DNA from: Rebecca billardiae RCC1528
Taxonomy: Eukaryota > Protista > Haptophyta
Assembly (NCBI GenBank): GCA_965240325.2
Contig: OZ251234.1
Coordinates: 372,001-436,000 of the forward strand
Length of the DNA stretch: 64,000 nucleotides
Direction: 5' to 3'
Shown here: piece after piece, positions 7,895 through 34,700 of the stretch
Layout: the number at the start of each line of letters is the position of its first letter
Position numbering within the stretch: the stretch's first letter is position 1
Made by a program: the position numbers and the translations under genes
Notes under the pieces: generated by a model
Databases searched by the model: none
What the model was told of the DNA's origin: nothing
Seen by the model: only the letters and a program-made list of their open reading frames with translations

Positions 7895-7937
<43 letters not shown>

Positions 7938-8358: not shown

Positions 8359-8392
<34 letters not shown>

Positions 8393-11900: not shown

Positions 11901-11931
<31 letters not shown>

Positions 11932-12917: not shown

Positions 12918-12950
<33 letters not shown>

Positions 12951-13034
12951 CCGTCTTCGCCGCCGCCCTCGGCGCCGCCTCCGCCGTCTCCGCCGCCGCC
13001 ACCCAGCCCGCCGCCGCCGTCTCCGCCGCCGCCG

Positions 13035-13100
<66 letters not shown>

Positions 13101-14099
13101 CCGCCGAGCGTGCCTCCGCCGTCGCCGCCGCCGCCGCCGCCGCCGCTGCCGCCGCCGAGCCCGCCGTCGCCGCCGCCACCGCCGCCTTCGCCCTCGCCGC
13201 CGCCGCCCTCGTCGCCGCCCAGCCCCCCGACCCCGCCGCCGCCCAGCGCGCCGCCGCCGCCCTCGCCGCCCTCCTTGCCGCCGTCTGAGCCGCCCGCGCT
13301 GCCGCCCATCCCGGGCTGCGAGCCGCTCGCCCTCAAGCTGCTCGCGCTGAGCACCGCCTCGGGGCGCACGCTCGCCAACGAGGGCTTCGCCGCGGAGATC
13401 GCCGCGGTGTTCGGCGCGACTAACCCCGAGTTCGCCGAGCTCGCCGCCGAGCTCGCGGGCAACGGGCTCACGATCGGGTGCGCCGAGCTGCCGCTGTCGG
13501 TCACGTTCCACGCGACGAGCGGGCTCGCCCGGCTCGCGGGCGCGTACCTGCGGATCTCGTCCGACTGGTGGCTGAAGCGGCCGCGCGCCATCGAGCTGTA
13601 CGCGCAGCTGAGCGACGAGTCGTGGGCGCTCGAGAGCGCGTACACCTTCCCGGGCGACTCGGCCACCGCGTGCGGCGACGGCGTCGACACGTTTGGCCTG
13701 CAGCCGTGCACTCAGACGACGTACTCGTACCTCAACGCACAGCTGGGCAACGGCGACTACCCGGCGGGGCTCAACCGGACCGGCGAGTTCCGGCTGGACT
13801 TCGTGGACGGGTACTGCAACGGCAACCTCTTCAAGCTGCACGACGTGCGGCTGATCTCGTCGGGCTGCGGCTCGCCGCCGCCGCCGCCGCCGTCGCTCCC
13901 GCCGCCGAGCCCGCCGAGCCCGCCGCCGCCAAGCTCGCCGCCGCCGCCGTCGCCGTCGCCACCGCTGCCGCCGTCGCCCGCGCCGCCGCCGCCGCCGCCG
14001 CCGGACCCGCCCATCCCGCCGTTCCCGCCGCCGCAGTCGCCTCCGCCGCCGCTGCCGTCGCCGCCGTCGCCGCCGCCGTCGCCCGGGCCGCCGCCCGAG

Positions 14100-14130
<31 letters not shown>

Positions 14131-14328
14131 TGCCGCCGTCGCCGCCGCCGCCGCCGCCGCCGCCGCCGAGCGCGCCGCCGCCGAGCGCGCCGCCGCCGCC
14201 CAGCCCACCGCCGCCCAGCCCGCCCCCGCCGCCGCCGTCGCTGCCGCCGCCGCCGCCCTCGGCGCCGCCGCCAGCGCCTCCGCTGCCGCCGCCGCCCTCG
14301 CCGCCGCCGCAGGCGCCGCCGCCGCCCA

Positions 14329-14367
<39 letters not shown>

Positions 14368-14568
14368 GCCTGCCGCCGCCGAGCCTTCCGCCGGCACCGC
14401 CGCCGCCCACGCCGCCCACGCCGCCGTCGCCGCCGCCAGAGTCGCCCTTCCCGCCGCCGTTCCCCACGCCGCCGCCGCCCGTGCCGCCGCCACGCCCGCC
14501 GCCCGCGCCGCCGCCGGCGCCGCCTCCGAGCCCGCCGCCACCGCCGCCGCCGAGCCCACCGCCGCCCT

Positions 14569-14610
<42 letters not shown>

Positions 14611-14935
14611 GGCTCCCGCCGCCGCCGAGCCCGAGCCCAGTGCCGCCGCCGAGCCCGCCGCCGAGCCCGCCGCCACCCCCGCCGAGCCCGCCGCCGAGCC
14701 CGCCGCCGAGCCCGCCGCCGAGCCCGCCGCCGCCGCCGCCGCCGCCGACTCCTCCGCCAAGCCCGCCGCCCTCGCCGCCACCGCCGCCGCCGCCCCCTCC
14801 CACGCCACCACCCTCGCCACCGCCGCCGAGCCCGCCGCCACCGTCGCCGTCGCCGCCGCCGCCGCCTCCGCCACCGCCGCCGCCCACGCCGCCGTCGCCG
14901 CCGCCGCCACCGCTGCCCGCGCCGCCGCCGAGCCC

Positions 14936-14976
<41 letters not shown>

Positions 14977-15216
14977 CGTCACCACCCCCTCCGCCGCCAC
15001 CGACGCCGCCACCGAGCCCGCCGCCGCCGCCGCCTCCGACGCCGCCGCCAAGCCCGCCGCCTTCGCCGCCGCCGCTGCCGCCGCCGTCGCCGCCGCCGAG
15101 CCCGCCGCCGTCGCCTCCGCCGAGCCCGCCGCCGTCGCCGCCGCCGCGCCCGCCGCCGAGCCCGCCGCCGTCGCCGCCACCGAGCCCGCCGCCGCCGCCC
15201 AGTCCGCCGCCACCCT

Positions 15217-15247
<31 letters not shown>

Positions 15248-16131
15248 CAAGGCGCCGCCGCCGCCGCTCCCATCGCCGCCGCCCTCGGCGCCGCCAATGC
15301 CGCCGCCGAGCCCGCCGCCGGCGCCGCCGCCTTCGCCGCCGCCTTCGCCGCCGCCGCGCCCGCCACCGAGCCCGCCGCCGAGCCCGCCGCCGCCGCCGCC
15401 GCCGCCGCCACCCACGCCGCCACCGAGCCCGCCCCCACTGCCGCCGCCCTCGCCGCCGCCTTCCCCGCCGCCCTCGCCGCCGCCCTCGCCGCCGCCCTCG
15501 CCGCCGCCCAGGCCGCCGCCCTCGCCGCCGCCGAGCCCGCCGCCGCCGCCCTCGCCGCCGCCGCCCTCGCCCTCACCGCCGCCGCCGCCGCCACCGCCGC
15601 CGCCACCGCCACCGCCGAGCGCGCCGCCGCCTCCGCCGCCACCTTCGCCCCCACCGTCGCCACCGCCGCCGCCGCCGCCGACGCCGCCGCCGAGCCCGCC
15701 GCCGAGCCCGCCGCCGAGCCCGCCGCCGAGCCCGCCGCCGAGCCCGCCGCCGAGCCCGCCGCCGCCGCCGCCGCCCATGCCGCCGCCGTCGCCGCCGCCC
15801 CCACCGCCGCCATCGCCGCCGCCGAGCCCACCGCCGTCGCCGCCGCCGTCACCGCCGCCGTCACCGCCACCGCCACCCCCGCCGTCGCCGCCGCCGTCGC
15901 CGCCGCCGTCGCCGCCGCCCGCGCCGCCGCCGAGCCCGCCGCCGAGCCCGCCACCGAGCCCGCCGCCCGCGCCGCCGCCGAGCCCGCCGCCGAGCCCGCC
16001 TCCGAGCCCGCCGCCAGCGCCGCCACCGAGCCCGCCGCCCAGCCCGCCGCCGTCGCCGCCGCCGATCCCACCGCCCTCGCCGCCGCCGTCGCCGCCGCCG
16101 AGCCCACCGCCGCCGTCGCCGCCGCCCCCGT

Positions 16132-16164
<33 letters not shown>

Positions 16165-18189
16165 GCTTCCCGCCGCCGCCATCGCCGCCGCCGCCTCCCT
16201 CGCCGCCGCCGCCAAGCCCGCCGCCGAGCCCGCCACCGTTGCCGCCGCCGCCGCCGCCGCCGAGCCCGCCGCCGAGCCCGCCGCCGGTACCCCCGCCGAG
16301 CCCGCCGCCCTCGCCGCCGCCCTCGCCGCCGCCCTCGCCGCCGCCGTCGCCGCCGCCGCCGCCGCCGCCGTACGACGAGTGCGCGCCGCTCGTCGCGACG
16401 CCGACGTACGCGTTCGCCGGGGGCGCGGCCGACGGCGCGGGCGCCGACCTGACGAACAACGCGAAGATCAACCGGCTCTTCGACACGTCGCTCATGACGG
16501 CGGGCAGCACGTGGCCGTGCTCGCACCTGCCGCTCACGATCGAGTTCGACGTGTCGGGCGGGCACGGCGCGCGCGACACAATGTACCTGCGCGTGGTCGC
16601 CGAGGGCAACTCGAAGCGGCCGCAGGACATGGAGCTGTACGCGCAGCTCGACGACGCGAACGGCACGTACCGGCTCGAGGCAGCGTTCACCTTCCCCGCC
16701 GCGGACTCGAACTCGTGCGGCGACGGCAACGTGACGTTTGGCGGCGAGCCGTGCGAGACGGCCAACACGCGCTCGTTCGCCAACGTGCAGGTGCCCTCGT
16801 CCACGCCCGACGACGACGGCCTCGTCGGCGGCTCGGTCTCGGGCTCGGTCTCGGGCAGCGTCGAGAGCTACACGCTCAGCCCGAGCGGCGAGTTCGTCGA
16901 GAGCAGCGGCCACTACCGCCTGGTCGTGCGCAGCGCGTACTGCACGCAGCGCTTCTTCACGCTGTACGAGGTGCAGGCCATCTCGTCTGACTGCCAGAGC
17001 CCGCCGCCGCCGAGCCCGCCGCCGCCGAGCCCGCCGCCGCTCCCGCCGCCGAGCCCGCCGCCGAGCCCGCCGCCGTCGCCGCCGCCGAGCCCGCCGAGCC
17101 CGCCGCCGCCCTCGCCGCCGCCGCCAAGCCCGCCGCCGCCCTCGTCGCCGCCGCCGCCGCCGAGCCCGCCCTCGCCGCCGCCGGGCGAGTGGTGCGCGTA
17201 CGTGGTCGTCACGATCGTCAAGGACCCGTGGCCCGAGGAGACGCGCTGGGAGATCCGCAAGCTGAACGAGACGGGCGACGGCGCGCCCGCGGTCGTGCTC
17301 GAGCGCGAGAACCAGGAGTCTGGCGGCAACTGCCTGCTCGACGGCTCGTACGTGTTCGAGATCACCGACTCGTTTGGCGACGGCGTCCGGCTCGGCAGCT
17401 TCCAGGTGCACATCGGGCTGGACAAGGACGGGACGGGCGAGGGCGAGCTGCTGTGCGAGGGCTCCAACTTTGGGCGCATCAAGCAGTGCCCGTTCGTGCT
17501 GCGCACGCCGTCGCCCGAGCCGCCGCCGAGCCCGCCGCCGAGCCCGCCGCCGCCGAGCCCGCCGCCGAGCCCGCCGCCGAGCCCGCCGCCGCCGAGCCCG
17601 CCGCCGAGCCCGCCGCCGTCGCCGCCGCCGTCGCCGCCGCCGAGCCCGCCGCCCTCGCCGCCGCCCTCGCCGCCGCCGTTGCCGCCGCCGAGCCCGCCGC
17701 CCTCGCCACCGCCGTCGCCGCCGCCGTCGCCGCCGCCGAGCCCGCCGCCGTCGCCGCCACCGTCGCCGCCGCCGTCGCCGCCGCCCTCGCCGCCGCCGCC
17801 CTCGCCGCCGCCGCCCTCGCCGCCGCCGCCGTCGCCGCCGCCGCCCTCGCCGCCGCCGCCCTCGCCACTGCCGCCCTCTCCGCCGTCGGAGCCGCCGCCG
17901 CCGCCCTCGCCCACGTCCTACCCGATGTTCCTCGAGTTCGACTTCCCAGACAAGCTGCAGGTGGAGACGGCGTCGCTGCCGCACGTCGTGCAGCCGCCCG
18001 CCGATCTGCCCGAGTTCCCCTCGTTCGTCGGCTTCGACATGCAGGGCGTGCCGGCGTCGCTCGTGATCTCGGCCCTGCCGAAGATCACGCCGCAGATGCC
18101 CGAGCTGCCGCGCATGCTGCTCTCGATCCCGATGATGCTGCCCGAGCAGCCGTCGCCGCCGCCGTCGCCGCCGCCGTCGCCGCCGCCCT

Positions 18190-18255
<66 letters not shown>

Positions 18256-21200
18256 TGTGCCGCAACCGCTTCACGACGTCCTTCTGCTGGCGGCACCGCG
18301 CCAAGTGCTGGTGCCCGCTCATCCGCAACCTGTGCGAGCGCACGTGCCGCCGGTGCAACCCGACAGAGTGCAACGACGCGTACGGCTCGCACTTCTGCAG
18401 CTTCCGCACGTACAAGTGCCACAAGCCGTACATGGTGGAGGGGTGCAAGGCGACGTGCGGCTTCTGCGGCGGCACGCCGCCCGCGTCGCCGCCGCCGTGG
18501 TCTTGCTTCGACGAGCGCTCCGCCGCCTTCTGCGACGACGCGCTCTCCAAGGGGCGGTGCGCGACGTCCGAGCTCGTGCGCACGCGCTTCTGCAAGTCGA
18601 CGTGCGGTGCGTGCACGCCCGTCGGCGCGTACGCCGTGTGCGAGTCGCACGGCGACCCGCACTTCACGACGTGGACGGGCGTGCGGTACGACTGGCAGGG
18701 CCTCGGGCCGTACACGCTCGCGGACGTGCCCCTCGCCAACCTGCACATGCAGGCGTACCAGTGCCGCTGGGGGTACGGCGCGTCCTCGAACGCGGCGCTC
18801 GCGTTCACGCTCGGGGACCACCTGTACGAGCTGTACGGCCCCTCGCTCTTCATCGACGGCAAGGGCTCCGGCATCAACGGCGGCGGCCGCCGCGCGCTCG
18901 GCGACGGCTCGACCGTCACGGTCGACGACAAGACGGTCGCCGTCGAGTTCGACGAGGTGTCGATCTCGATCGCGCGGCGCGACGGCTCGCTGGTCGCGGC
19001 GGTGGGCCACTGGCACGACGCGACGATCCGGATGCCCACGCCGCGCACGCGCGGCGCGTCCGGCCTGTGCACGAGCCAGCAGTCCGGCGCGGCCGAGCTG
19101 TCCGCCTCTGAGCTGCTCTTCACGCGCCAGGGGCGGCTCAGCACGATCGTCGAGAACTGCCTGCGCACGCCCGCCGGCGGCGAGGGCCCGGGCGGCGAGT
19201 GCAACAACCCGGGCAAGGACTGCTGCTTCCGGCCGATCGGCGAGGTGGAGGCGCTCTGCGCCAACGTGATCTGCGACCCGGTGAACCACGAGCGCTGCAT
19301 GTACGACTGCTGCCTGGCGGGCGTGGACGAGTGCGCCGCCGGGTACCTCGACTACATCCCGTGCCCGCCGCCGCCGTCGCCGCCGCCGCCGTACTTTCCG
19401 AGCCCGCCGCCGAGCCCGCCGCCGCCGAGCCCGCCGCCGAGCCCGCCGCCGAGCCCGCCGCCGCCGAGCCCGCCGCCGAGCCCGCCGCCGCCGAGCCCGC
19501 CGCCGTCGCCGCCGCCGAGCCCGCCGCCGCCGAGCCCGCCGCCGAGCCCGCCACCGAGCCCTCCGCCGCCGAGCCCGCCGCCGAGCCCGCCGCCGTCGCC
19601 GCCGCCGTCGCCGCCGCCGTCGCCGCCGCCGAGCCCGCCGCCGAGCCCGCCGCCGTCGCCGCCGCCGTCGCCGCCGCCCAGCCCGCCGCCACCGAGCCCG
19701 CCGCCGAGCCCGCCGCCCTCGCCTCCGCCCTCGCCGCCGCCCTCGCCGCCGCCGAGCCCGCCACCCTCGCCGCCGCCGCCGAGCCCGCCGCCGAGCCCAC
19801 CGCCGAGCCCGCCGCCGAGCCCGCCGCCGAGCCCGCCGCCCTCGCCGCCGCCGAGCCCCCCGCCCTCGCCGCCGCCCTCGCCGCCGCCCTCGCCGCCGCC
19901 GCCCTCGCCGCCGCCCTCGCCGCCGCCCTCGCCGCCGCCCTCGCCGCCGCCGAGCCCTCCGCCGTCGCCGCCGCCCTCGCCGCCGCCCTCGCCGCCGCCG
20001 AGCCCTCCGCCGTCGCCGCCGCCGTCGCCGCCGCCGTCGCCGCCGCCATCGCCACCACCGAGCCCGCCGCCGTCCCCGCCGCCGCCCTCGCCGCCGCCGT
20101 CGCCGCCGCCGAGCCCGCCGCCTGCGCCGCCGCCAAGCCCGCCACCGAGTCCGCCGCCGCCCTCGCCGCCGCCCTCGCCGCCGCCGTCCCCGCCGCCGAG
20201 CCCGCCGCCTGCGCCGCCGCCCTCGCCGCCGCCCTCGCCGCCGCCGAGCCCGCCGCCGTCTCCGCCGCCGAGCCCGCCGCCGCCGAGCCCGCCGCCATCG
20301 CCCCCGCCGAGCCCGCCGCCGTCGCCGCCGCCGTCGCCGCCGCCGGCGCCGCCACCGTCCCCGCCGCCGAGCCCGCCGCCGAGCCCGCCGCCGAGCCCGC
20401 CGCCTGCGCCGCCGCCGAGTCCGCCGCCCAGCCCACCACCGAGCCCGCCGCCGAGCCCGCCGCCGCCGAGCCCGCCGCCGAGCCCGCCGCCCTTGCCGCC
20501 TCCGTCCCCGCCGCCGTCGCCGCCGCCGAGCCCGCCGCCCTTGCCGCCGCCGAGCCCGCCGCCGAGCCCGCCGCCGTCGCCGCCCCCGCCGTCGCCTCCG
20601 CCGAGCCCGCCGCCGAGCCCGCCGCCGCCGAGCCCGCCGCCGTCGCCGCCGCCGAGCCCGCCGCCGAGCCCGCCGCCGCCATCGCCGCCGCCCTCGCCGC
20701 CGCCGAGCCCTCCGCCTGCGCCGCCGCCGAGCCCGCCGCCGAGTCCGCCGCCGAGCCCGCCGCCTGCGCCGCCACCGAGCCCGCCGCCGAGCCCGCCGCC
20801 TGCGCCACCGCCTGCGCCGCCGCCGAGCCCGCCGCCGAGCCCGCCGCCTGCGCCGCCGCCCGCGCCGCCGCCGAGCCCGCCGCCGAGCCCGCCGCCGAGC
20901 CCGCCGCCTGCGCCGCCGCCGAGTCCGCCGCCCAGCCCACCACCGAGCCCGCCGCCGAGCCCGCCGCCGCCGAGCCCGCCGCCGAGCCCGCCGCCCTTGC
21001 CGCCTCCGTCCCCGCCGCCGTCGCCGCCGCCGAGCCCGCCGCCCTTGCCGCCTCCGTCCCCGCCGCCGTCGCCGCCGCCGAGCCCGCCGCCCTTGCCGCC
21101 TCCGTCGCCGCCGCCGTCGCCGCCGCCGCCCTCGCCGCCGCCGCCCTCGCCGCCGCCGCCCTCGCCGCCGCCGCCCTCGCCACCGCCGCCCTCGCCGCCG

Positions 21201-24200
21201 CCGCCCATCCCTCCGCCCGCGCCGCCGAGCCCGCCAAGCCCGCCGTCGGCGCCGCCGCCGCCCAGGCCGCCGCCGCCGCCGCACTGCGACGGCAGCGAGC
21301 AGCTCACCGAGGGCCTGATCGCCTCGTTCAACCTGCAGAGCGGCGCGCCCGGCTTCAAGGTCGCCGGCAGCGACACGGAGTCGGCCGCCTCGTTCGCCTA
21401 CTTTGTGACCCACGCCGCGCCGGCGTCGGGCAAGGTCGAGGGCACCGTGCAGGGCTTCTCGTACCTGCGCTCGCGCCGGAGCTATGCGACGACCGTCGCG
21501 CCCGCCGCGGAGGTGGTGCCCGTGCTGCGCACCTCGACGGTGTACGCGGACCGCAGCAGCGTGCGCGTCGCGTACCAGGTGCGCGACGCGCAGGGCCGCA
21601 CGTCCGTCGACTCGAGCAACCTGAACGCTCGGCTCTGGCTGCGCAAGGTGGGCTCGACGCAATCGAGCTACACGAGCTGCGGCGGCGCGAGCGGCGCCGG
21701 CAGCATCGGCGAGTGCACCGTCAGCCTCGACGCGTCGTGGTTCGGCGGGGCGGACGCCGAGGCGACGGTGGACGTCGCGATCCGCTACGGCTCGCTCACG
21801 GTCGCGATGCGCTCGGCGGGCACGCTCACGCTGCGCGGCTCGCCCGCGCACGGCGAGCTCAGCTCGGCGGGCATGCTCGCGACGCTCGAGAGCGCGCCGG
21901 TCTTCCCGGGCGACTCGTTCGACGTGGTGCTCAGCGCGCACACCGGCGGCTTCGCGCTCAAGGCGTGGGAGATCGCGCTGAGCTACGACAGCGCCTCGCT
22001 CAGCTACGAGGGCGCGACCGGCTCGGGGCTGTACGACGCAAACCCGCAGGGCTCGGACGGCGAGCTCACCGTGAACGTGCCGGGCACGGACACGGCGGAC
22101 GCGCTCGTCACCGGCGGCGCGGTGCACCTGCTCACGCTCACCTTCGGCGTGCGCGCCGGCGTCACCGCCGGCGCGACGCTGAGCGACGTGCTCTCGTTCA
22201 CCGCCGTCGCGATGATCAACGCGGGCAACGTCCAGTTCCTCTCGAACGCGGCCGGCCAGGTGGCCGACCACCGGGACGGGCTGCACGCGTCGGGCGAGGT
22301 CGTCGTCGACGCGGTGCGCGTGGTGGGCGCGCACGCGTACACGGACATCGTCGAGGTGGTGAACACCGCGCCGCTCACGGGCTCCGCGCTCAGCGCGCAG
22401 CTCACCGTGCTCGAGCACTACTCGCGCGCCGCGACCGGCTCGAGCGTGCAGACGAGCGCGTACACGTGCGGCGTCGCGGACGCCAACGCGACGGCCGTGC
22501 TCGAGGTAAACGCCGCGACGTGCGAGCTCACGCTCGGCCCGGAGCACACGGCGGGTGCCGCGCGCGTGAGCATCACCGCCGCCTCCGCCGCCGACCCGGC
22601 CATCAACGCCACCACGCCGATGCGCGTGTGGTACCCGCTGAGCACGTCGCTCGGCGTGTCCGACGCGCGGCTGCAGCAGGTCGAGCTGCTGCAGGCCGCG
22701 GGCGCGTGCGGCTCGCCCGGCTTCCAGAGCGCCGACCTGCTGCTCACCGCCACGTTCGGCGGCGCCGGGCTGGAGACGAGCGCGCCGCTCGACGTGTCCG
22801 CGCTCGCCGCGTTCGAGACGAGCGACTCCTCCGTCGTCCAGGTCGACGGCTCCGTCGTGACGGGCAAGACGGTGGGCAGCGCGACGATCGGCGTCGGCAA
22901 CGGCGCCGCCGTCGCCGACACGGTCGACGTGCTGGTCGACGCGCAGCTGGTGAACGTGACGATCAGCGCGGTGGTCGCGTCGTCGATCTCGTTCACCTCG
23001 TCGCCGCCCTCCACGATCCCCGTCGCGAGCGCCGCGGCGGCAAGCTTCGACGTCGCCGCCTCGGCCGTGCAGGAGCTGAAGCTCGAGGGCGACCGCGCGG
23101 GCGTGTACGCCTGGGGCGCGTTTGGCGACGGCACGGTGCGCGCGATCAAGCCGTCGGAGATGCTCGTGCTCTCGCGCTCGGACGGGATCGAGCTGATCGA
23201 GGGCGACGCCTCGACGCCGTGGAAGATCGAGGTCGCGACCGGCGCCTTCGCCGAGTGCGGCCTGCTCGTGCAGGCCGAGTGGTACGTGTGCGACACCGTG
23301 GTCGCCAACGGGTACGCGACCGTGTTCCTCGACCTGCCCAAGGCGGGCGCGCTGCTCGTCTCGGCGGACGAGGAGCGCGTGACGACGCCGGACGACCCGG
23401 TGGCGCAGTACCCCGTGTCGGTGGCGACGTCGAGCGAGGTCGTCGTCAAGGTCGAGTTCGAGACGGGCGCCGTCGTCGACTTCTCCGACGACCCGCGCGT
23501 GACGGTGCGCGTCGCCGCGTCCTCGCAGGCGTGCGCGTTCATGTCGAGCTCGACCAAGTTCAGCATGCGCACCAACTCGACGTGCTCCGAGGTGGAGGTG
23601 CACGTGCAGCTCTCGGCGTACGCGCTGGGCGCGACGCTCTTCGTGCCCGTCGTCTACCTCGAGCGCCTGTACGTCACCGCCTCGCCGTACCCGGCGTACT
23701 CGGGCTCGACGGGCGTCGTGAAGAGCACGCTGCACAAGATCGACTGCACCGACCACTTCCAGCACGCGAGCGCGGTCGCGATCGCGCGGCTGACCGACGG
23801 CGACGAGGTGCCCGTGACGGTCGCCGCGGCGTTCGGCTCGACGAACAGCTCGGTCGTGCGCGTCGAGGGCACGCGGCTGCGCGGCGAGAACGCGGGCAGC
23901 GCGGTGATCACGAGCGTGTGGGCGGCGACGCGCTCCGAGCCGTACCCGATGCTCGTCTCGATGGTGCCGGTCGTCGTGAGCGGCCTGCAGCTTCGCTTCA
24001 ACGGGCTGGCGCAGAACACGCTGGTCGGGCCGGTGGGCACGGAGCGGAGCAGCCGCGTGCGCGTCGACTTCGACGACGGCACCGTCTTCACCAACTTCTT
24101 CTCGCAGGTCGACTGGATCCCGACCTCGGAGCTGCTGCTCTTCTCGAGCGGCGCGACGAGCGCCGTCACCGTCTCGGCCGAGGGCGTGATGCGCCTGCTC

Positions 24201-25676
24201 GGCAACCACCCCGAGCTGGTGGTGATGACGGTGACGTCGGCGTGCGACGCGGCGACGCTGGACACGAACAGCCTCGCGGCCAACCTCGCCGCCGAGGACG
24301 GCGACGTCGACCTCGGCAGCCGGTACGGCCTGCAGTTCGAGCAGGACGGCGACACGCTCAAGGTGGAGGTGCGCGTGCACGCGGACGGCCAGCTCAAGAA
24401 CTTCCAGATCAACCTCGAGATCGACCCGTCGGTGTTCGTCGCGAGCGCGTGCGACCAGGGCGCCGACTGGAGCGGGCTGTGGTCGTGCACGCGCAACGAC
24501 CCGGTCGACGTCGTCACCATCGTGGGCAACAACGCCGACTCGACCAAGTCGGGCGACAACCTCGAGGTGGCGGTCGTCTACTTCACGGTGCAGTCGTCCG
24601 CGCAGTCGACGATCGGCGGCTCGATCCTCGAGCTGATCCAGTACGTGGGCGGCGTGGAGCAGCGCACGGTGGGCGGCACCGTCTTCGCGGGCGAGGGCGT
24701 CGCCGCCGTGAGCACGAGCCGCCGCCGCCGCCTCGCGGCCGTGCAGCGCCAGTCGGCGCAGCGGCTCGCCGCCGCGCGCGCCGCGCAGCCGCCGCGCCGC
24801 CGGCTGCAGTCGTCGATCACGACCGCGGACATCCAGTACCTCGTGTACGAGGAGTGGAACCTGGACGGCGACTGCGCGTCCAAGTGCGCCGTGCTGGGCG
24901 ACCTCAACGGCGACTGCTCCTTCTCGTCGTACGACGTCTTCGCCGGCTCGATCGTGCTCAGCGGCATCTCGCTCGGCGCGGTCACGTTCAGCGACCTGTG
25001 CCCGGCCATCCAGAGCCGGCTCGACCCCAACCTCGACTCTGCGTTCGGCCTCGCCGACATCCGGTACCTGCTGCTCACGGTCGGGCGCAAGCTGCACTTC
25101 GTGGTGGACGTGAGCGCGGACGCGTCCGACATGATCGCGGGCACGACGGGCGACCTCGTCTTCGCCGTCGCGCTGCGCAACTACGCGGGCGCGCCCGTGT
25201 CGACGCAGGCGGGCGTGCGCGCCGAGATCGCCTACCCCAAGAAGGACGGCGAGCCTGTGTACGCGCTGGGCGCGGGCGACGGGCGCACGCCGGCGAACAA
25301 CTGGCTGGCCGAGCTCGCGCTCTTCAACGCGTCGGCCGGCGTGTACGCGGTGCACGTGCACGCCGCGCCGTACTGGGTGTCCAGCCGCACGTTCGGCATC
25401 GCGTTCATGCTCGAGACGGTCGACGGCTCGGGCGGCACGGAGAGCGAGCGCAACCTCGCCTTCTTCGGCAGCAGCGCGTCGCCGTACGCGGAGCAGGGCT
25501 CGTCGTTCTCGCCGTTCACCACGGTGACGGTGGGCGGGCCGACGAACATCGCGCTGCCGCCGAGCCCGCCGCCGCCCACGCCGCCTCTGTCGCCGCCGCC
25601 GCCCTCCACGCCGCCGCCGCCGCCTCAGTCGCCGCCGCCCTCGCCGCCGCCGCCGCCGTCGCAGCCGCCGCCGCTC

Positions 25677-25709
<33 letters not shown>

Positions 25710-25755
25710 AGCCCGTCGCCGCCGTCGCCACCCAGCCCGCCGCCGCCGCCGCCCT

Positions 25756-25787
<32 letters not shown>

Positions 25788-28700
25788 ACGCCGCCGCGCC
25801 CGCCCACGCCGCCGCCGCCGCCGACCCCGCCGCTCACGTGCGTGCTGGGTGACGTGCTCGTGCAGGGCGTGCGCGCCGAGTTGAGCGCAGCCGCGACCGG
25901 CCCGGGCTTTGCGCTCGACGGCACCTACTCGTCGACCTCGCCGACGTTCACGCGGGACTTTGGGTTCTTCTACGCGTACCCGCCGCAGACGAGCGGCGCC
26001 ATCGCGGCGACGATCCAGGGCTACTCGTACCTGCGCCGCTCGCGCAGCTTCTCGATGGCGCGCAGCGAGGTGGCGAGCGTGAGCGCCGTCGTGCGCACGG
26101 CGACGCTCTACTCGGGCCGCAACAAGGTGCGCGTCGCGTACCAGGTGCGCGATGAGGCGGGCCGCACGGACGTGGAGACGGGCGGGCTGACGGTGCAGCT
26201 CGCGCTCGCGCACTCGAGCGGCTCGCCGACGAGCACCACGTCGTGCTCGTCGCCGTCGACGGGCGGCATCGGCCTGTGCTCGGTGACGCTGAACAGCGGA
26301 TGGTTCTCGACGAGCGCGGGCTCTGCCACGGTGACGGTGACGGCCAAGTACGGCAGCACGGTCGCCGCGACGCACGCCGTGGGCTCCGTCGCGCTGGCGG
26401 CGTCGCCGGCGCACGGCACGCTCTCGTCGGCGGGCATGCTCGCCACGATGGCGACGGCGCCGCTGTACCCGACCGACTCGTTCGAGGTGAGCTTCCGCGC
26501 GCACACGGGCGCGTTTGCGCTCAAGTCGTGGTCGGTGCTGCTGCAGTACGACGCCTCCGTGCTGCAGTACGGCGGCGCGACGGGCAGCGCGCTGTACGCC
26601 GCGCCCACCGTGAGCCACAACGAGGCGGAGGGCCTCCTCGACGTGACGGCGCTCGACACCGCGGGCGGCGTCTCCAACGCGGCCGTGACGGGCAGCGCGG
26701 TGCACGTGCTCACGCTCACGTTCAGCGTGCGCGCCACCGCGCTCACCAACACGACGCACGCCGGCGTGCTCTCCTTCGTCGTCTCGTCGATGATCAACGC
26801 GGGCAACATCGAGTACGCCGCCGACGTGGCTGGCGACGTGGCCGACGACCGCGACGGCCTGCAGACCTCGGGCCGCGTGTTCGTCGAGGCGGTCGCGGCG
26901 GTGGGCGCGCACGCGTACACGGACGTGGCCGAGGTGGTGAACACCGCGCCGCTCACTGGCGACGCGATCAGCGCGCAGGTGACCGTGCTCGAGCACTACA
27001 ACCGCGACTCCGTCTCGTCGAGCGAGGAGACGTCGGGCTACCGCTGCTCGACCACCGACACCGCCGTGCTCTCCGTCAGCTCGTCGAGCTGCGCGGTGAC
27101 GATCACGGGCGCTCACACCGGCGGCGCGGCCTCGGCGACGATCACCGTCGCGTCCGTGGACGGCGCCGTGGGCGCGCAGACGCCGATGCGCGTGTGGTAC
27201 CCGCTGAGCGCGACGATGAGCGTGTCGGACGACGAGCTGCAGCGCGTCGAGCTGCTGTCGAACACGGCGTCGTGCGGCTCGCCCGGCTACCAGAGCGCCG
27301 AGGTGAGCGTCGTCGCCGACTTTGGCGGCGCGTTGCTCACGACGGTGAGCGGCGTCGACGTGAGCGCGCTGGTGACGCTCGCCTCGTCCGACGCGGCCGT
27401 GCTCAGCGTGTCCGGCTCGACGATGACCGGCCTCGCCGACGGCGTGGCGAACGTGACGCTGGGTGGCGGCGCGACGCTCGGGCTCTACGAGGCCGTGGGC
27501 GTGAGCGACGAGTACGTCAGCGTCAACCTGACCGCCGTGGTCGTGTCCAAGCTCGCGTGGTCGCCGCAGCCGCCGGGCAGCGTCGACGCCGCGCACGGCG
27601 AGACGGTCACGGCGGGCGCGGAGCTCGCGCAGGAGCTCGAGCTCGAGGGTGACACGGCGGGCATCTACGCGTGGGCGACGTTCAGCGACGGCGCGACGTA
27701 CGCCGTGCCGCAGGCGCAGCTCTCGCTCGCCGCCGAGTCGAACAACCTCTTCCTCTCCACGCCGAGCAGCTCGGCGCCCTGGCGGCTCACCGTCGCGGAC
27801 GGCGCGCGCCGCGACTGCGGCGCGCTCGTGCGTGTCGAGTGGAACGTGTGCGGCGCGATGGTGGCGCTGGACTACCCGGAGGTGACGCTCAACCTGCCGG
27901 GCGCCACGTCCATGACCATCAAGCCCGCGCGCTCGCGGCTCACCTCGCCCGACGACGACGCGCGCATGGTGCCCGTCTCGATCGCCACGTGGAGCGCTCT
28001 CTCGGTCGACGTCGAGTACGAGACGGGCGACGTGGTCGACCTCACGGGCGACGCGCGGATCCGGCTGCGCGTGGCGGACGCGTCGGCGGGCTGCGCGGAG
28101 ATGACGAGCTCGTTCACCGTCGCCATCAAGGCGGGCGCGGCGTGCACCTCGATCGAGCTCGAGGGCAGCGCCATCGGCCTGGGCGTGTCCACGAGCGTCG
28201 TGATCCCTGTCGTGTACGTGCAGCACGCGTACCTGGGGCTCTCGCCCTACCCCACCTACTCGGGCTCGTCGAGCGTGGTGACGACGACGCTGCGCAAGAT
28301 CGACTGCACGGACTTCTACCAGCACGCGATCGCGATCGCGACCGTCGTCCTCACCGACGCGTCCGAGGTGCAGGTGACCGGGCAGAGCGCCTTCTCGTCG
28401 TCCGACTCGGCGCTCGTGAACGTCGACGAGCGCGAGATCGAGGGTCTCGCCGTGGGTGCGGTCAACATCACCGCGCTGTGGGCGTCGACGACGAGCCGGC
28501 CGTACGCGCTGTCGGTGTCGGACGACCCGGTGCTCGTCACCACCCTGCGCCTCAGCTTCGCCGGCCTCTCCGCCTCCACGCTCGTCGGGCCGGTCGGCAC
28601 GGAGCGCGCGACGCGCGTGCGCGTCGTGTTCGACGACGGCACCGAGTTCAGCAACTTCTTCACCAAGGTGGACTGGATCGTGCCGACGTCGGCGCTGCTC

Positions 28701-31700
28701 ACCTTCTCGAGCGACGCGCCGACGGCGGTCGGCGTCTCCACGGACGGCGTGCTCGCGCTGTACAACAACCACCCGACGCTCGTCTCGATCGCCGTCTTCA
28801 ACGCGTGCAACGCGGCCGTCTCGGACAGCAGCTCGCTCGCGGCCAACCTCGCCGCCGAGGAGCGCGACGTCGACCTCGGCCACCGCTTCGGGCTGCAGTT
28901 CGACCAGTTCGGGGACACGGTCGAGGTGAACGTGCGCATCAACGCCAACGGCGACCTCAAGAACTTCCAGCTCGACATCAAGTTCGACGACTCGGTCCTT
29001 CGCGCGAGCGAGTGCGACCAGGGCGCCGAGTGGCAGGGCCTGTGGTCGTGCACGCTCAACGACCCGACCGACACGGTCACGGTCGTGGGCAACGACGCCG
29101 AGTCGACGGTGTCGGGCGACGACGTGGAGGTGGCGATCATCTACCTCACCGTGCAGTCCACCGCGCTCACGCAGATCCGCGGCACCGTCGTCGAGCTCAT
29201 CCAGTACGTGGGCGACACCGAGGAGCGCATCACGGGCGAGGAGATCTTTGCGGGCAAGGGCAACGTGCAGGTCACGTTCAGCCGGCGCCGCGCGCTCGCC
29301 GAGGTGCAGGAGCGCGCGCGCCACCGGCGCGCAGCACGCATCGCGGCGGCGCCGCCACGCCGGCGCCTGCAGTCCTCCTTCTCCACCGCCGAGATCGTCG
29401 ACCTGGTGTACGAGGAGTGGAACATGGACGGCGACTGCGCGTCCAAGTGTGCCGTGCTCGGCGACCTGGACGGCGACTGCGTCTTCTCGTCGTACGACGT
29501 GTTCGCGGGCTCGATCGTGCTGAGCGGCATCTCGCTCGGCGTGGTGACGTTCGGCGACCTGTGCCCGACGATCCAGAGCCGGCTCAACCCGAACCTGGAC
29601 AGCGACTTTGGGCTGACCGACATCCGGTACCTGCTGCTCACGGTCGGGCGCAAGCTGCACTTTGTGACGGACGTGTCGTTCGACGCGAGCCGGATGTTCG
29701 CGGGGACGCAGAACGACCTTGCGGTCGCCGTGACGCTGCGCAACTACGCGGGCGAGCCAGTCTCGACGCAGACGGGCATGCGCGCGGAGATCGCGTACCT
29801 GGCGTCTGAGGGCACGCCCGAGTACAACATCGGCTCGTCGGACGGCACGTCGCCGGCTGGGTACTGGCTGTCCAACCTGGCGCTGACGAACGCTTCGGCG
29901 GGCGTGTACTCGGTGCACGTGCACCCGGACTCGTTCTGGCTGGCCAGCCGCGCCTTTGGCATTGCGGTCATGCTCGAGACCGTCGACGCCTCTGGCGGGA
30001 GCACGTCGGACCGCAACATCGCCTTCTTTGGCAGCAGCGCGTCGCCGTACTCGGAGCAGGGCTCGTCGTTCTCGCCGTACGGCAGCGTCAGCGTGGTTGG
30101 CAGCCTGCCGCCGTCCAGCCCTCCGACGCCGCCGCCGCCGAGCCCGCCATCGGAGCCGCCATCTTCGCCGCCTGGCGCGCCGCCCCCTCCGCCGCCATCG
30201 CCGCCGCCAAGCCCGCCGCCGTCGCGGCCACCGCCTCCACCGCCATCGCCCCCGCCGAGCCCACCTCCGTCGCCACCTCCGCCACCGCCACCAAGCCCGC
30301 CACCGAGCCCGCCGCCATCGCCGCCGCCGCCGCCGCCGCCGACGCCCCCTCCGCCCAGTCCGCCGCCGCCGCCACCGCCAGCACCGCCGCCGCCGCCGCC
30401 GCCGACGCCCCCACCGCCAGGGAGTCCGCCGAGCCCGCCGCCTTCGCCGCCGCCACCGCCTCCGACCCCTCCACCGCCCTCGCCCACTCCACCCTCGCTG
30501 CCGCCTCCACGACCCGCCCCTCCGCCATCGCAGCCGCCATCGTCACCGCCGGGCGCGCCCAGCTCACCGCCGCCGCTGTCGCCGCCGCCGGCGCCTCCTC
30601 GCCAGTGCGAGTATTCCGCGGACGACCTCGTGGCGGGCGCCTCCGCCGTGTTCGAGGCGAGCGCGTCGGGCCCGGGCTTTGCGCTCGACGGCACGTACTC
30701 GTCGACCAACCCGACCTTCTCGGAGGACTTTGGCTTCTTCTACGCGTACCCGCCGCAGACGAGCGGCCGCGTGACCGCGTCGATCCAGGGCTACTCGTAC
30801 CTCGAGCGCTCGCGCTCGTTCAAGATGAGCCGCAGCGAGGTGGCGAGCGTCAGTGCCGTCGTGCGCACGACGACGCTGCACGAGGGCGAGAACCGCAACC
30901 TGCTCCGCGTCGCGTACCAGGTGCGCGACGATGCGGGCCGCACGGACGTGGAGACGAGCGGGCTGACGGTGCAGGTGGAGCTTGCGCACTCGGCAGGCTC
31001 GCCGACAAGCACCACTTCGTGCTCGTCGCCGTCGACGGGCGGCATCGGCCTGTGCTCGGTGACGCTGAACAGCGGATGGTTCTCGACGAGCGCGGGCTCT
31101 GCCACGGTGACGGTGACGGCCAAGTACGGCAGCACGGTCGCCGCGACGCACGCCGTGGGCTCCGTCGCGCTGGCGGCGTCGCCGACGCACGGCACGCTCT
31201 CGTCGGCGGGCATGCTCGCCACGATGGTCTCGTCGCCGCAGTACCCGACCGACTCGTTCGACGTGGTGATCACCGCGCACGCGGGCGCCTTTGCGCTCAA
31301 GTCGTGGGAGCTCTTCCTGCAGTACGACACGTCTGTGCTCGAGTACCGCCAGCACACGGGCGGCTCGGACTACGCGACGCCGACGGTGAGTATCAGCACG
31401 GCGAACGGCGAGCTGAGCGCGTCGGCCCTCGACATCGTCACGACTGAGGGCGACGTGTCGGGCACGGACGTGTGGGTGCTCACCGTCCAGTTCCGTGTCG
31501 TGGGCTCTGCTGCCACGGGCGTGACGCATCCGGACGTGCTGTCGTTCAACGTGGTGTCGATGATCAACGCGGGGACGGTCGAGTACCTGGCTGACACTGC
31601 GGGCTTCGTGGCCGACGACCGTGACGGCCTGCAGTCGTCGGGCCATCTCGCCGTCGAGGCGGTCCTCGCGGTGGGCGCGCACGCGTACACGGACATCGTC

Positions 31701-34700
31701 GAGGTGGTGAACACCGCGCCGCTCACGGGCGATGCGATCAGCGCGCAGGTGAGCGTGCTCGAGCACTACAACCGCGCAGCGAAGGCATCCCTCGAGCAGA
31801 CGTCGTCGTACGCGTGCAGCACAACCTCGGCGACGGTGCTCTCGGTGGACGGCTCGACGTGCGCTGTGACGCTCTCGGGCGCGCACAGCGCGGGCGCGGC
31901 GTCGGCCGTGATCGACGTGGTCTCCGGCTCGCTGAGCGCGCAGACGCCGATGCGCGTGTGGTACCCGCTGAGCGCGACAATGAGCGTGTCGGACGCCGCT
32001 CTCGAGCGCGTCGAGCTGCTGCAGAGCGCGGCGTCGTGCGGCTCGCCGGGCTACCAGAGCGCCGAGGTGAGCGTCGTCGCCGACTTTGGCGGCGCGTCGC
32101 TCACGACGGTGAGCGGCGTCGACGTGAGCGCGGTGGTGACGCTCGTCTCGGGCGACAGCGGCGTGGTGACCGTCGACGGCTCGATGGTGACTGGCGTGGG
32201 CGCCGGCTCGACGAGCGTGTCGCTCGGAGGCGGCGCGACGTCGCCGGCGAGCGCGAGCGTGAGCGTGAGCGACGTTGTGCTGTCGGCCAACCTGACGGCG
32301 GTCGCCATCTCCGACTTCTCGTGGACGTCCGCGCCGCCGTCCAAGGTGCCGGCCACGCCTGCCACGTACTCGTTCACCACGGGCGCGCAGGTTGCGCAGG
32401 TGCTCGCACTGGAGGGCGACGAGGCGGGCGTGTACGGCTGGGCAACGTTCTCGGACGGCACACGGGCGAAGGTGCCGCCGGCGCAGCTGCAGCTCACGTC
32501 GCTCACGTCCAGCATCGAGCTGACGTCGGGCAGCTCATCGACGCCGTGGAAGCTCGAGGTGGCGACGGGCGCGGTGTACGGCTGCGGCAAGCTGCTGTAC
32601 GCCGAGTGGAGCGTGTGCGGCACCGTGGTCGCCGACACGCACGCGCTGGTCTTCCTCGACATGCCGCAGCCGTCTGGGCTGCGCGTGTCGTCCTCGCGCT
32701 CGTATCTGACCTCGCCGGACGATCCGGTGGCCTCGGCGCCCGTGTCGATCGCGTCGTCTGCCAGCCTCACTGTGATCGTCGACTACGAGACGGGCACATC
32801 TGCGGACTTCACGGGCGATGAGCGCGTGTCGGTGACGGTGGACGCTGGCTCGGCGAGCTGCGCGCAGATGTCGGCGTCGAGCACGGTGTCCATCGTGAGC
32901 GGCGCGACGTGCTCGTCGATCACCCTCTCGGTGAGCGCGTTTGGGCTGTCGACGACGCTGGAGATCCCGGTGGTGTACCTCGACTACATGTACGTGTTCG
33001 CGTCGCCGTACCCGTCGTTCAGCGGCTCGACGAGCATGGAGAAGACGACGCTGCGCCGCATCGACTGCACGGACGCGTACCAGCACGCGAGCACCGTGGC
33101 GATCGCGGTGATCACCGGCGGGTACCCCGACCAGGCGGTGACGTCGCACGCGCTGTTCACCTCGTCGAACAGCTCGGTGATCGAGATCGACGCCAACCTG
33201 TACACGCGGCTGCGCGGCACGAACGCGGGCGCGACGAACGTGACGGCCGCGTGGGCGGGCGCGACGAGCCTGGCGTACCCGATGGTCGTGTCGAACGAGC
33301 CGGTCCTGGTGACCCAGCTCACGCTGACGTTCCGCGGCCTGACGAGCAACACGCTGTACGGGTCTGTGGGCACTCGGCGCGAGGTGAAGGTGCGCGTCGA
33401 GTTTGACGACGGCACCGAGTTCCCCAACTTCATCACGCAGGTGGAGTCGGACTGGATCCCGACGTCGGACCTGCTGCTCTTCTCGAGCGACGCGACGAGT
33501 GCAGTCACCGTCGACACCGAGGGCGAGATGACGCTCCGGGGCAACCACTACGCGCTCGTGACGATGACGGTCACGTCGGCGTGCAACGCTGCGATGCTGG
33601 ACACGAGCCAGCTCGCCGCCAACCTCGCGGCGGAGGATGGCGACGTTGACCTGGGCAACATCTACGGCGTGCAGTTCGACCAGTTTGGCGACACGGTCGA
33701 GATCCTGGTGCGCATCCACTCGGGCGGCGACCTGAAGAACTTCCAGATCGACATCAAGTTCGACCCGTCGGTGTTTGTCGCGAGCGCGTGCAACCAGGGC
33801 GCCGACTGGGGCGGCCTCTGGTCGTGCACGCGCAACGACCCGGTCGACGTGGTGACGGTGGTGGGCAACGACGCGGAGTCGACGGCTTCGGGCACGGACG
33901 TGGAGGTTGCCGTGGTGTTCCTCACGGTGCAGGGCTCGACGCTGTCCGAGATCAGCGGCGAGGTCGTCGAGCTGATCCAGTACGTGGACGGCGTCGAGGT
34001 GCGCACCGGTCCAGAGGCCCTGTTCGCGGGCAACGGCTTTGTGTCGACGAGCGCGGGCGGCGCGCGCCGGCTCGCCGAGGTGCAGCAGCGCTCGCAGCGT
34101 CGGCAGCAGGCGCGCCTGGCGGCGATGCCGCCGCGCCGGCGTCTGCAGTCGTCCTTCTCCGAGTCGGACATCATCGACCTGGTGTACGAGGAGTGGAACA
34201 TGGACGGCGACTGCGCGTCCAAGTGCGCCGTGCTGGGCGACCTGGACGGCGACTGCGTCTTCTCGTCGTACGACGTGTTCGCGGGCTCGATCGTGCTGAG
34301 CGGCATCTCGCTCGGCGCGGTGACGTTCGGCGACCTGTGCCCGACGATCCAGAGCCGGCTCAACCCGAACCTGGACAGCGACTTTGGGCTGACCGACATC
34401 CGGTACCTGCTGCTCACGGTCGGGCGCAAGCTGCACTTTGTGACGGACGTGTCGTTCGACGCGAGCCAGATGTTCGCGGGGACGCAGAACGACCTTGCGG
34501 TCGCCGTGACGCTGCGCAACTACGCGGGCGACGCCGTCTCGACGCAGACGGGCATGCGCGCGGAGATCGCGTACCTGGCGTCTGAGGGCACGCCCGAGTA
34601 CGCCGCCGGCTCGTCGGACGGCACGTCGCCGGCTGGGTACTGGCTGTCCAACCTGGCGCTGACGGACGCGTCTGAGGGCGTGTACTCGGTGCACGTGCAC

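What the first reader, a model, noticed from the sequence alone, without database searches (positions are those of the whole stretch)
21540..24300. Each super-repeat looks like a TMEM132-type ectodomain, multiplied nine times without a membrane anchor
Seen: the ordered motifs C...C.V.L...WF, cohesin-like, EVVNTAPLTG, C.S....VL.V...C, MRVWYPL...VSD..L.RV, C..PGYQSAEV.V.A.F and DVS.LV...S.D..V..V.G..VTG...G. Known (from memory): animal TMEM132 proteins carry NTA(I/V)LTG, VWxP..PL...SD..L and C..xYQ.A.V.V...F in the same order, and have an N-domain, a cohesin and bacterial-Ig domains. Inference: this is a non-animal relative that keeps extra Ig domains, a second cohesin and a dockerin. It could reveal the ancestral partner of the TMEM132 cohesin, which has no known dockerin.
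Basis: partly seen in the sequence, partly recalled or inferred. Interest (0 to 1): 0.8.

Follow-up and report, generated by a model that had tools for sequence, protein, structure and literature searches.

The report
Nine TMEM132-like cohesin-dockerin units, one giant protein
A 20,133-codon gene of a haptophyte-type alga strings together nine copies of a 12-domain extracellular unit whose first half matches the whole outer part of animal TMEM132 proteins and whose second half adds a second cohesin and a dockerin, so this "animal" adhesion cassette exists outside animals together with a candidate binding partner.

Summary
Window 21540-24300 lies in the first of nine ~1,430-aa super-repeats (50-98% identical) inside one uninterrupted ORF (2076-62477, 20,133 aa).

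- Pfam places Cohesin and Ig_TMEM132_4th in the repeats. The 4th-domain score reached the gathering score in all four repeats scanned alone.
- Relatives also hit Ig_TMEM132_5th and 6th.
- An AlphaFold2 model of repeat 1 (pLDDT 94.6) has all 13 Swiss-Prot TMEM132 proteins as its best Foldseek matches (E 7e-38 to 6e-34). The match covers model residues ~11-710 against TMEM132 ~45-800. The next hit is at 6e-21.

The second half of each repeat holds three more Ig domains, a second type-I-like cohesin (Z 12.5), a basic linker, a dockerin with two calcium loops (family profile hits solved dockerins at 4e-8) and a final beta-sandwich.

The same 12-domain unit occurs one to four times in hundreds of proteins. 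The named ones come from haptophytes (Pavlovales, Diacronema, Prymnesium) and the green alga Cymbomonas. Many relatives carry a C-terminal membrane helix; this protein has none.

Function is inferred: a secreted, multivalent, calcium-dependent adhesive or matrix scaffold. Which cohesin binds the dockerin is untested. No paper found links TMEM132 to haptophytes, and the published origin is holozoan.

The parts
2076..62477 (+). Single ORF of 20,133 codons (first ATG at 2109); the whole giant protein
   Evidence: homology-supported domains along the C-terminal 14,000 aa
2223..2288 (+). Only strongly hydrophobic segment (aa 50-71), signal-peptide-like or signal-anchor-like
   Evidence: Kyte-Doolittle scan; the assignment is inferred
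2076..21284 (+). N-terminal 6,400 aa: several kinds of small repeated globular modules separated by Pro/Ser-rich linkers up to 835 aa (13878-16382, GC 85-90%)
21285..25556 (+). Super-repeat 1, which holds the finding. 12 domains: D1 21333-21554, D2 21555-21851, cohesin 1 21864-22307, Ig4 22320-22649, Ig5 22656-22979, Ig6 22986-23366, Ig7 23373-23657, Ig8 23673-23972, Ig9 23976-24290, cohesin 2 24297-24725, dockerin 24870-25115, terminal beta-sandwich 25095-25523
   Evidence: AF2 models
24900..25058 (+). Repeat 1 dockerin: two 12-residue calcium-loop motifs (24900-24935 and 25023-25058) with D/N at positions 1, 3, 5 and D at 12
   Evidence: family profile against solved dockerins
25833..30116 (+). 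Super-repeat 2
30591..34889 (+). Super-repeat 3 (98% identical to repeat 4)
35142..39446 (+). Super-repeat 4
39738..44036 (+). Super-repeat 5
44298..48590 (+). Super-repeat 6
48819..53108 (+). Super-repeat 7
53259..57545 (+). Super-repeat 8
57756..62123 (+). Super-repeat 9, followed by a 111-aa hydrophilic tail (62142-62474) and the stop codon

Best explanation
Shown: the finding lies in unit 1 of nine tandem 12-domain extracellular units in one giant ORF. The order in each unit is D1-D2-cohesin1-Ig4-Ig5-Ig6-Ig7-Ig8-Ig9-cohesin2-dockerin-beta-sandwich. Domains D1 to Ig6 are collinear with, and homologous to, the whole ectodomain of animal TMEM132 (N-region, second Ig, cohesin-like third domain, three BIG domains). 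The second half adds a second type-I-like cohesin, a conserved basic linker and a dockerin with two intact calcium loops. The units are separated by Pro/Ser-rich spacers. The protein has an N-terminal hydrophobic segment and no membrane helix. Inferred: the protein is secreted and works as a multivalent, calcium-dependent adhesion or matrix scaffold with 18 cohesins and 9 dockerins. Its dockerins engage cohesins, most likely cohesin 2, either inside a unit as a clamp or between units and molecules as a cross-link. Membrane-anchored relatives with one to four units could tether such a network to the cell. Evolutionary reading, also inferred: animal TMEM132 corresponds to the N-terminal half of this wider eukaryotic unit, which animals kept with a membrane anchor and without cohesin 2 and the dockerin.
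For: Repeat structure. Pfam Cohesin and Ig_TMEM132_4th in the repeats: the two 5,000-aa pieces give 3 stretches each, and repeats 1, 2, 4 and 9 scanned alone score 28-50 bits against a cut-off of 27. A weak 6th-domain hit lies in the right place. Among 61 family cassettes, the 4th domain hits in 58, the 5th in 7 (4.6e-9), the 6th in 9 (8.4e-6) and Cohesin in 12. AF2 model of repeat 1 residues 1-800: pLDDT 94.6, pTM 0.82. Foldseek against Swiss-Prot models: ranks 1-13 are all TMEM132 proteins, E 7e-38 to 6e-34, query 11-710 against hit ~45-800, TM 0.45-0.49; the next hit is at 6e-21 with TM 0.15. AFDB clusters and the ESM Atlas give the same picture. Invariant or near-invariant Cys at repeat-1 positions 395/413 and 475/669 fit the published TMEM132 disulfide pattern of one BIG1-internal and one BIG2-BIG3 bridge (PMC6030884). 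Cohesin 1 matches solved cohesins at Z 14.0 and cohesin 2 at Z 12.5. The dockerin profile hits solved dockerins 4fl4, 2ccl and 1ohz at 4e-8 to 1.5e-7, and Pfam Dockerin_1 hits 27 of 43 family segments. Both calcium loops are intact in all nine units. The 12-domain unit is conserved in relatives. There is no TM helix here, but at least 25 relatives have one.
Against: No binding, localisation or expression data exist. No RNA run could be listed. Pfam Dockerin_1, Ig_TMEM132_5th, TMEM132_N, Ig_TMEM132_2nd and TMEM132_3rd do not hit the window's own copies. For those parts the homology rests on family-level profiles and on predicted structures. TM-scores to TMEM132 are below 0.5 over the full length, which fits flexible multi-domain rods but is not a rigid match. 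I could not inspect model coordinates or PAE, so cis versus trans cohesin-dockerin pairing is open. The hydrophobic segment starts 44 residues after the first Met, so the start codon or the signal-peptide call may be wrong.
Confidence: 0.75

Rival explanations
1. The dockerin's partner is the TMEM132-type cohesin (cohesin 1). The algal unit would then preserve the ligand class that animal TMEM132 lost or moved to another gene.
For: One chain holds both a TMEM132-type cohesin and a dockerin. Cohesin 1 has a canonical cohesin fold, Z 14.
Against: Units that lack cohesin 1 (P0002; units 2-3 of P0140) still keep cohesin 2 plus the dockerin. Among the nine repeats the dockerin is the most conserved domain (78% mean pairwise identity) and cohesin 1 the least (54%), which is an odd pattern for a fixed pair. 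Animals kept cohesin 1 but neither cohesin 2 nor the dockerin.
Confidence: 0.2
2. Cohesin 2 and the dockerin form a purely intramolecular clamp that stiffens each unit. If the basic RRRL linker is cleaved, the clamp would hold the two halves together. Adhesion to other partners would then be done by other domains.
For: Cohesin 2, the basic linker and the dockerin are adjacent and almost always co-occur. The five-domain C-half model has pTM 0.84, which suggests a confidently packed arrangement.
Against: Contacts in the model could not be inspected. No cleavage evidence exists.
Confidence: 0.3
3. The resemblance to TMEM132 is only a convergent string of generic Ig and cohesin domains.
For: Big_2 and cohesin folds are common. 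Full-length TM-scores are below 0.5.
Against: Family-specific Pfam models for the 4th, 5th and 6th domains hit. All 13 TMEM132 entries outrank every other Swiss-Prot model by 13 or more orders of magnitude, and the alignment covers six domains in the same order. The Cys pattern is shared.
Confidence: 0.04
4. The number nine is partly an assembly artefact: near-identical repeats 3-5 could be over- or under-collapsed.
For: Repeats 3, 4 and 5 are 95-98% identical. The only run found holds just two exact 151-nt pieces, so the array is not independently verified.
Against: The other six repeats differ by 22-50% from every other repeat and cannot be assembly duplicates. The reading frame is intact throughout.
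Confidence: 0.1

Closest known systems
Animal TMEM132A-E and C. elegans TMEM-132 (Sanchez-Pulido & Ponting 2018, PMC6030884)
   Same: The same ordered ectodomain: N-region, Ig, cohesin-like domain and three BIG domains. Pfam Ig_TMEM132_4th hits the window, and the 5th and 6th domain models hit its relatives. The conserved Cys pattern is shared. They are the best structural matches.
   Different: This protein has no transmembrane helix and no TMEM132_C tail with WIRS or PP1 motifs. The cassette is repeated nine times, and each copy continues into three more Ig domains, a second cohesin, a dockerin and a beta-sandwich. The host is an alga, not a holozoan.
Uncharacterised algal proteins: Pavlovales sp. 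CCMP2436 KAJ1626334/KAJ1626336, Diacronema lutheri KAG8459670, Prymnesium parvum KAL1521827, Cymbomonas tetramitiformis KAK3238477/KAK3258399
   Same: They hold the same 12-domain unit. The Pavlovales protein is 49% identical to repeat 4 over a whole unit. UniRef already auto-names two of them 'TMEM132 fourth domain-containing protein'.
   Different: They carry one to three units, against nine here. None has a described function or a published domain analysis in the library searched.
Bacterial cellulosome cohesin-dockerin modules (e.g. 1ohz, 2ccl, 4fl4, 5nrk)
   Same: Cohesin folds match at Z 12-14. The dockerin has two calcium-loop repeats, and its profile matches at E ~1e-8 to 1e-7.
   Different: The setting is a eukaryotic extracellular protein with no enzymes attached. 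Conserved cysteines lie in and before the dockerin. Cohesins and dockerin sit in the same unit. Binding is untested.
Choanoflagellate and sponge coherin, lefftyrin and hedgling cadherins
   Same: They are reported to embed the five-domain TMEM132 cassette in larger adhesion proteins (PMC6030884).
   Different: Those carry cadherin repeats. No cadherin domain was found here. I could not fetch them for comparison.
Green-algal hydroxyproline-rich glycoproteins (from my own knowledge: sexual agglutinins, pherophorins)
   Same: Long (S)P-rich shafts alternate with globular modules.
   Different: No sequence homology was tested or shown. This is an analogy only.

Membership tests
TMEM132 | Ig_TMEM132_4th (PF16070) at or above the gathering score | tested here: met
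   Repeats 1, 2, 4 and 9 scanned alone score 28.0, 47.7, 50.4 and 38.0 bits against a cut-off of 27. Repeat 1 scores 26.2 when only its first 800 aa are scanned. The 5,000-aa pieces show three stretches each.
TMEM132 | Ig_TMEM132_5th and 6th domains following the 4th | tested here: inconclusive
   In the window's own copies the 6th scores only E 0.015-0.02 and the 5th gives no hit. Relatives in the same alignment hit the 5th at 4.6e-9 and the 6th at 8.4e-6. The structural alignment covers both.
TMEM132 | Cohesin-like third domain directly before the BIG domains | tested here: met
   Pfam Cohesin lies at repeat residues ~213-327. VIA Z is 14.0 against solved cohesins for repeat-1 residues 193-344.
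TMEM132 | N-terminal conserved region (TMEM132_N, Ig_TMEM132_2nd) | tested here: inconclusive
   There is no Pfam hit. The Foldseek alignments start at model residue ~11-13 against TMEM132 residue ~44-56, so they include these domains.
TMEM132 | Whole ectodomain collinear with TMEM132 and closer to it than to other Ig arrays | tested here: met
   The top 13 Swiss-Prot hits are all TMEM132, E 7e-38 to 6e-34, against 6e-21 for the next. AFDB clusters agree.
TMEM132 | Conserved cysteines: a BIG1-internal pair and a BIG2-BIG3 inter-domain pair | tested here: inconclusive
   C395 and C413 are invariant, and C475 and C669 nearly invariant, in 61 cassettes at fitting positions. 3D proximity was not checked.
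TMEM132 | Single-pass type I membrane anchor and cytoplasmic TMEM132_C tail (WIRS and PP1 motifs) | tested here: not met
   There is no hydrophobic helix after aa 71 apart from one weak segment inside a dockerin, and no PF15706 hit. At least 25 relatives do have a C-terminal helix.
Cohesin-dockerin system | Cohesin beta-sandwich fold | tested here: met
   Both cohesins match type I cohesins at Z 12-14, rmsd 2.3-3.0 A over ~130 residues.
Cohesin-dockerin system | Dockerin: duplicated calcium-binding loop-helix | tested here: met
   The family profile hits solved dockerins at 3.7e-8 to 1.5e-7 over ~65 of 83 positions. Dockerin_1 hits 27 of 43 family segments but none of the window's own at E<=1. 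All nine copies keep D/N at loop positions 1, 3, 5 and D at 12 in both loops. Language-model neighbours of the repeat-1 C-half carry Dockerin_1.
Cohesin-dockerin system | Calcium-dependent cohesin-dockerin binding | not testable with these tools
   This needs a binding assay or a complex prediction with PAE.

The most novel reading that the evidence does not exclude
Animal TMEM132 is the membrane-anchored, truncated remnant of an older 12-domain cohesin-dockerin adhesion unit found well beyond Holozoa. The dockerin kept in the algal units represents the ligand class of the TMEM132-type cohesin, giving the first concrete lead to what the TMEM132 cohesin binds.
Probability: 0.2. Interest if true: 0.85.

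Novelty: new variant of a known kind. Interest (0 to 1): 0.62.

Why it matters
TMEM132 genes are linked to hearing loss, panic disorder and Wnt signalling, but the ligand of their extracellular cohesin-like domain is unknown. The published view is that the architecture arose in early holozoans and that no dockerin partner is detectable in vertebrates (PMC6030884). Here the complete ectodomain cassette turns up in haptophyte and green-algal proteins, embedded in a conserved unit that also carries a bona fide-looking dockerin and a second cohesin. That widens the known range of the cassette beyond Holozoa, through either an older origin or gene transfer. It also supplies natural cohesin and dockerin pairs that can be expressed and tested for binding. 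Finally, it describes one of the largest predicted adhesion or matrix proteins of a marine alga.

Tried and rejected
- Three word-indexed homologue searches returned only 1-5 hits and no animal TMEM132 sequences. As a result I could make no direct algal-animal sequence alignment, hhalign comparison or phylogeny.
- Foldseek of the C-half against the PDB gave only generic multi-Ig arrays. The cohesin became clear only with VIA-align.
- Pfam Dockerin_1 does not hit the window's own dockerin segments even at E<=1. The call rests on the family profile and the loop residues.
- No RNA-seq run could be listed. The single run found holds two exact 151-nt pieces and says nothing about expression or copy number.
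- The search of earlier findings returned nothing for this place.
- The long antisense ORFs (4,687 and 3,100 aa) are best read as by-products of GC-rich coding sequence. I did not test them.
- The flanks 1-2075 and 62478-64000 showed no convincing ORF by eye and were not searched.
- I considered a bacterial origin for the window and rejected it. The best named relatives are eukaryotic algae, and the Pro-rich linkers are typical of algal wall proteins.
Full report
**What is in the sequence**

The window (about 70% GC, locally 85-90%) holds one uninterrupted ORF, 2076..62477 on the + strand, of 20,133 codons.
- The first ATG is codon 12.
- The only strongly hydrophobic stretch is aa 50-71. It looks like a signal peptide or signal anchor, which is an inference.
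- There is no transmembrane helix further on. The last 111 aa are hydrophilic.
- The first ~6,400 aa are small globular modules of several repeated kinds. Pro/Ser-rich linkers up to 835 aa long separate them. Pfam gives only weak LTD and PAN hits there.

**The observation**

EVVNTA, MRVW(YP) and [YF]QSA each occur exactly nine times. Pro-rich linkers cut the C-terminal 14,000 aa into nine globular blocks of 1,424-1,456 aa.
- The blocks align over their whole length at 50-98% identity. Repeats 3, 4 and 5 are 95-98% alike, and repeat 1 is the most divergent.
- The finding's coordinates, 21540-24300, cover domains D2 to Ig9 of repeat 1.

**Is it TMEM132-like?**

Sequence evidence:
- Pfam finds Cohesin (PF00963) and Ig_TMEM132_4th (PF16070) in the repeats. 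The four repeats scanned alone score 28-50 bits on the 4th-domain model, against a cut-off of 27.
- The 4th-domain match runs from EVVNTAPLTG to MRVWYP. The cohesin lies directly upstream, and a weak Ig_TMEM132_6th hit lies downstream in the right place.
- An exhaustive profile search with the nine N-halves found 1,114 proteins at E<=1e-3 and 287 at E<=1e-30. Most of the best 150 listed match across nearly the whole 800-aa cassette.
- In an alignment of 61 such cassettes, members hit Ig_TMEM132_4th (58 of 61), 5th (7, best 4.6e-9), 6th (9, best 8.4e-6) and Cohesin (12).
- The conserved cysteines are C395/C413 inside Ig4 and C475/C669 in Ig5 and Ig6. They fit the BIG1-internal and BIG2-BIG3 disulfides predicted for TMEM132 (PMC6030884).

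Structural evidence:
- With that alignment, AlphaFold2 models repeat 1 residues 1-800 at pLDDT 94.6 and pTM 0.82.
- Foldseek against Swiss-Prot models puts TMEM132A-E of human, mouse, rat and zebrafish, plus the C. elegans homologue, at ranks 1-13. E-values are 7e-38 to 6e-34, with model residues ~11-710 aligned to TMEM132 residues ~45-800 and TM 0.45-0.49.
- Rank 14 is at 6e-21 with TM 0.15.
- AFDB fold clusters and the ESM Atlas agree.
- VIA-align shows that residues 193-344 are a cohesin fold, Z 14.0.

Both sides of the structural comparison are predictions. The full-length TM-scores are below 0.5, as expected for flexible rods of many domains.

**The second half of each repeat**

A model of repeat 1 residues 796-1424 (pLDDT 93.3, pTM 0.84) shows, in order:
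- two Ig domains;
- a cohesin, Z 12.5 to type I cohesins;
- a basic helical linker with a conserved RRRL motif (RRRLQSS[FI] in repeats 1-7, RRRLQTSF in repeat 8, RRALQT in repeat 9);
- a small helical module;
- a final beta-sandwich.

A 43-sequence profile of the helical module hits solved dockerins (4fl4, 2ccl, 1ohz and others) at 3.7e-8 to 1.5e-7 across about 65 of its 83 positions. Pfam Dockerin_1 hits 27 of the 43 segments, though none of the window's own copies. All nine copies keep D/N at positions 1, 3, 5 and D at 12 in both 12-residue calcium loops. Language-model neighbours of the repeat-1 C-half are dockerin, Big_2 and cohesin clusters.

**The family**

I built HMMs for the 12 domains and scanned all fetched proteins.
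- The giant protein is exactly 9 x [D1-D2-Coh1-Ig4-Ig5-Ig6-Ig7-Ig8-Ig9-Coh2-Doc-Bs].
- The same unit occurs one to four times in relatives.
- Named relatives come from Pavlovales sp. CCMP2436 (49% identical over a whole unit), Diacronema lutheri, Prymnesium parvum and the green alga Cymbomonas tetramitiformis. The rest are unnamed marine metagenome, EukProt or long eukaryote-sized contigs.
- The window's organism is therefore probably a pavlovophyte haptophyte, which is an inference.
- At least 25 relatives end with a hydrophobic helix and a short tail, like type I membrane proteins. This protein does not.
- One Myxococcota protein shares a partial arrangement: cohesin, Ig domains, cohesin.

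**How it probably works (inferred)**

The protein is probably secreted. It would be a beads-on-a-string molecule in which nine rigid 12-domain rods are spaced by Pro-rich, probably glycosylated, linkers. With 18 cohesins and 9 calcium-loop dockerins it is built for multivalent, calcium-dependent protein-protein attachment. That attachment could be a clamp within a unit, a cross-link between units and molecules, or a link to membrane-anchored paralogues.

Two observations bear on which cohesin is the dockerin's partner.
- Units that lack cohesin 1 still keep cohesin 2 plus the dockerin.
- Among the nine repeats the dockerin is the most conserved domain (78% mean pairwise identity) and cohesin 1 the least (54%).

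Both lean towards cohesin 2 as the partner. Cohesin 1, the TMEM132-type one, would then be free to diversify towards other ligands. This is weak evidence. I could not read model coordinates or PAE.

**Known or new**

UniRef already auto-labels Prymnesium and Cymbomonas relatives as 'TMEM132 fourth domain-containing', so the single-domain hit is on record. I found no paper that mentions TMEM132 together with haptophytes. The reference analysis places the origin of the architecture in early holozoans and notes that no dockerin partner is detectable in vertebrates.

The following were not found in the papers searched:
- the whole six-domain ectodomain is conserved outside Holozoa;
- it is half of a conserved 12-domain unit carrying a second cohesin and a dockerin;
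- that unit is multiplied nine-fold in an anchorless giant protein.

I classify it as a new variant of a known kind.

**Limits**

- I could not fetch animal or choanoflagellate sequences, so there is no tree and the direction of evolution (ancient origin or transfer) is open.
- No expression data could be found.
- The copy number of the near-identical repeats 3-5 is not independently verified.

Noticed in passing
window 2076-21284: The N-terminal 6,400 aa hold at least four kinds of repeated small modules. Examples: aa 357-483, 496-599 and 5037-5147 are related; aa 1542-1757, 3743-3934 and 4770-4976 are related; aa 841-1498 and 2336-2942 are related. None resembles the super-repeats. Pfam gives only weak PAN and lamin-tail hits.
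   Followed up: partly
window 11901-13301, 13878-16382 and 19365-21284: Pro/Ser-rich linkers of 467, 835 and 640 aa (70-79% proline in 250-aa windows, GC up to 90%) built of 9-15-nt sub-repeats. They look like hydroxyproline-rich glycoprotein shafts.
   Followed up: no
between cohesin 2 and the dockerin in every super-repeat, about 24726-24869 in repeat 1 (motif about 24807-24830): A basic linker with four to six dibasic sites carries a conserved RRRL motif (RRRLQSS[FI] in repeats 1-7, RRRLQTSF in repeat 8, RRALQT in repeat 9). An RRRL..RxRRxL pattern is also conserved in distant relatives. It could be a convertase-type cleavage site; this was not tested.
   Followed up: partly
window 30591-44036: Super-repeats 3, 4 and 5 are 95-98% identical in protein, against 50-78% for all other pairs. 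This means recent duplication or gene conversion, and it is the one place where assembly copy number could be wrong.
   Followed up: partly
all nine super-repeats: Conservation among the repeats differs by domain. The dockerin (78%), Ig5 (77%) and Ig4 (76%) are the most conserved. The TMEM132-type cohesin 1 is the least conserved (54%).
   Followed up: yes
minus strand 15861-29924 and 53433-62735: Antisense ORFs of 4,687 and 3,100 aa with Arg/Ala/Gly-rich translations. They look like by-products of the GC-rich coding strand rather than genes.
   Followed up: no
P0157 (Myxococcota bacterium MAG protein, 1,434 aa): This bacterial protein matches part of the unit (cohesin, then Ig7/8/9-like domains, then cohesin) at E 1e-23. 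It may be a clue to a bacterial source for part of the architecture.
   Followed up: no
P0002 (EukProt) and P0140: These relatives have units that lack cohesin 1 but keep cohesin 2 and the dockerin. P0002 also has a Pro-rich stalk, a hydrophobic helix-like segment and a ~300-aa tail (read from its sequence).
   Followed up: partly
window about 62560-62700: Just after the stop codon, translations read as runs of HT or CV, which suggests a CA/TG-type dinucleotide repeat.
   Followed up: no
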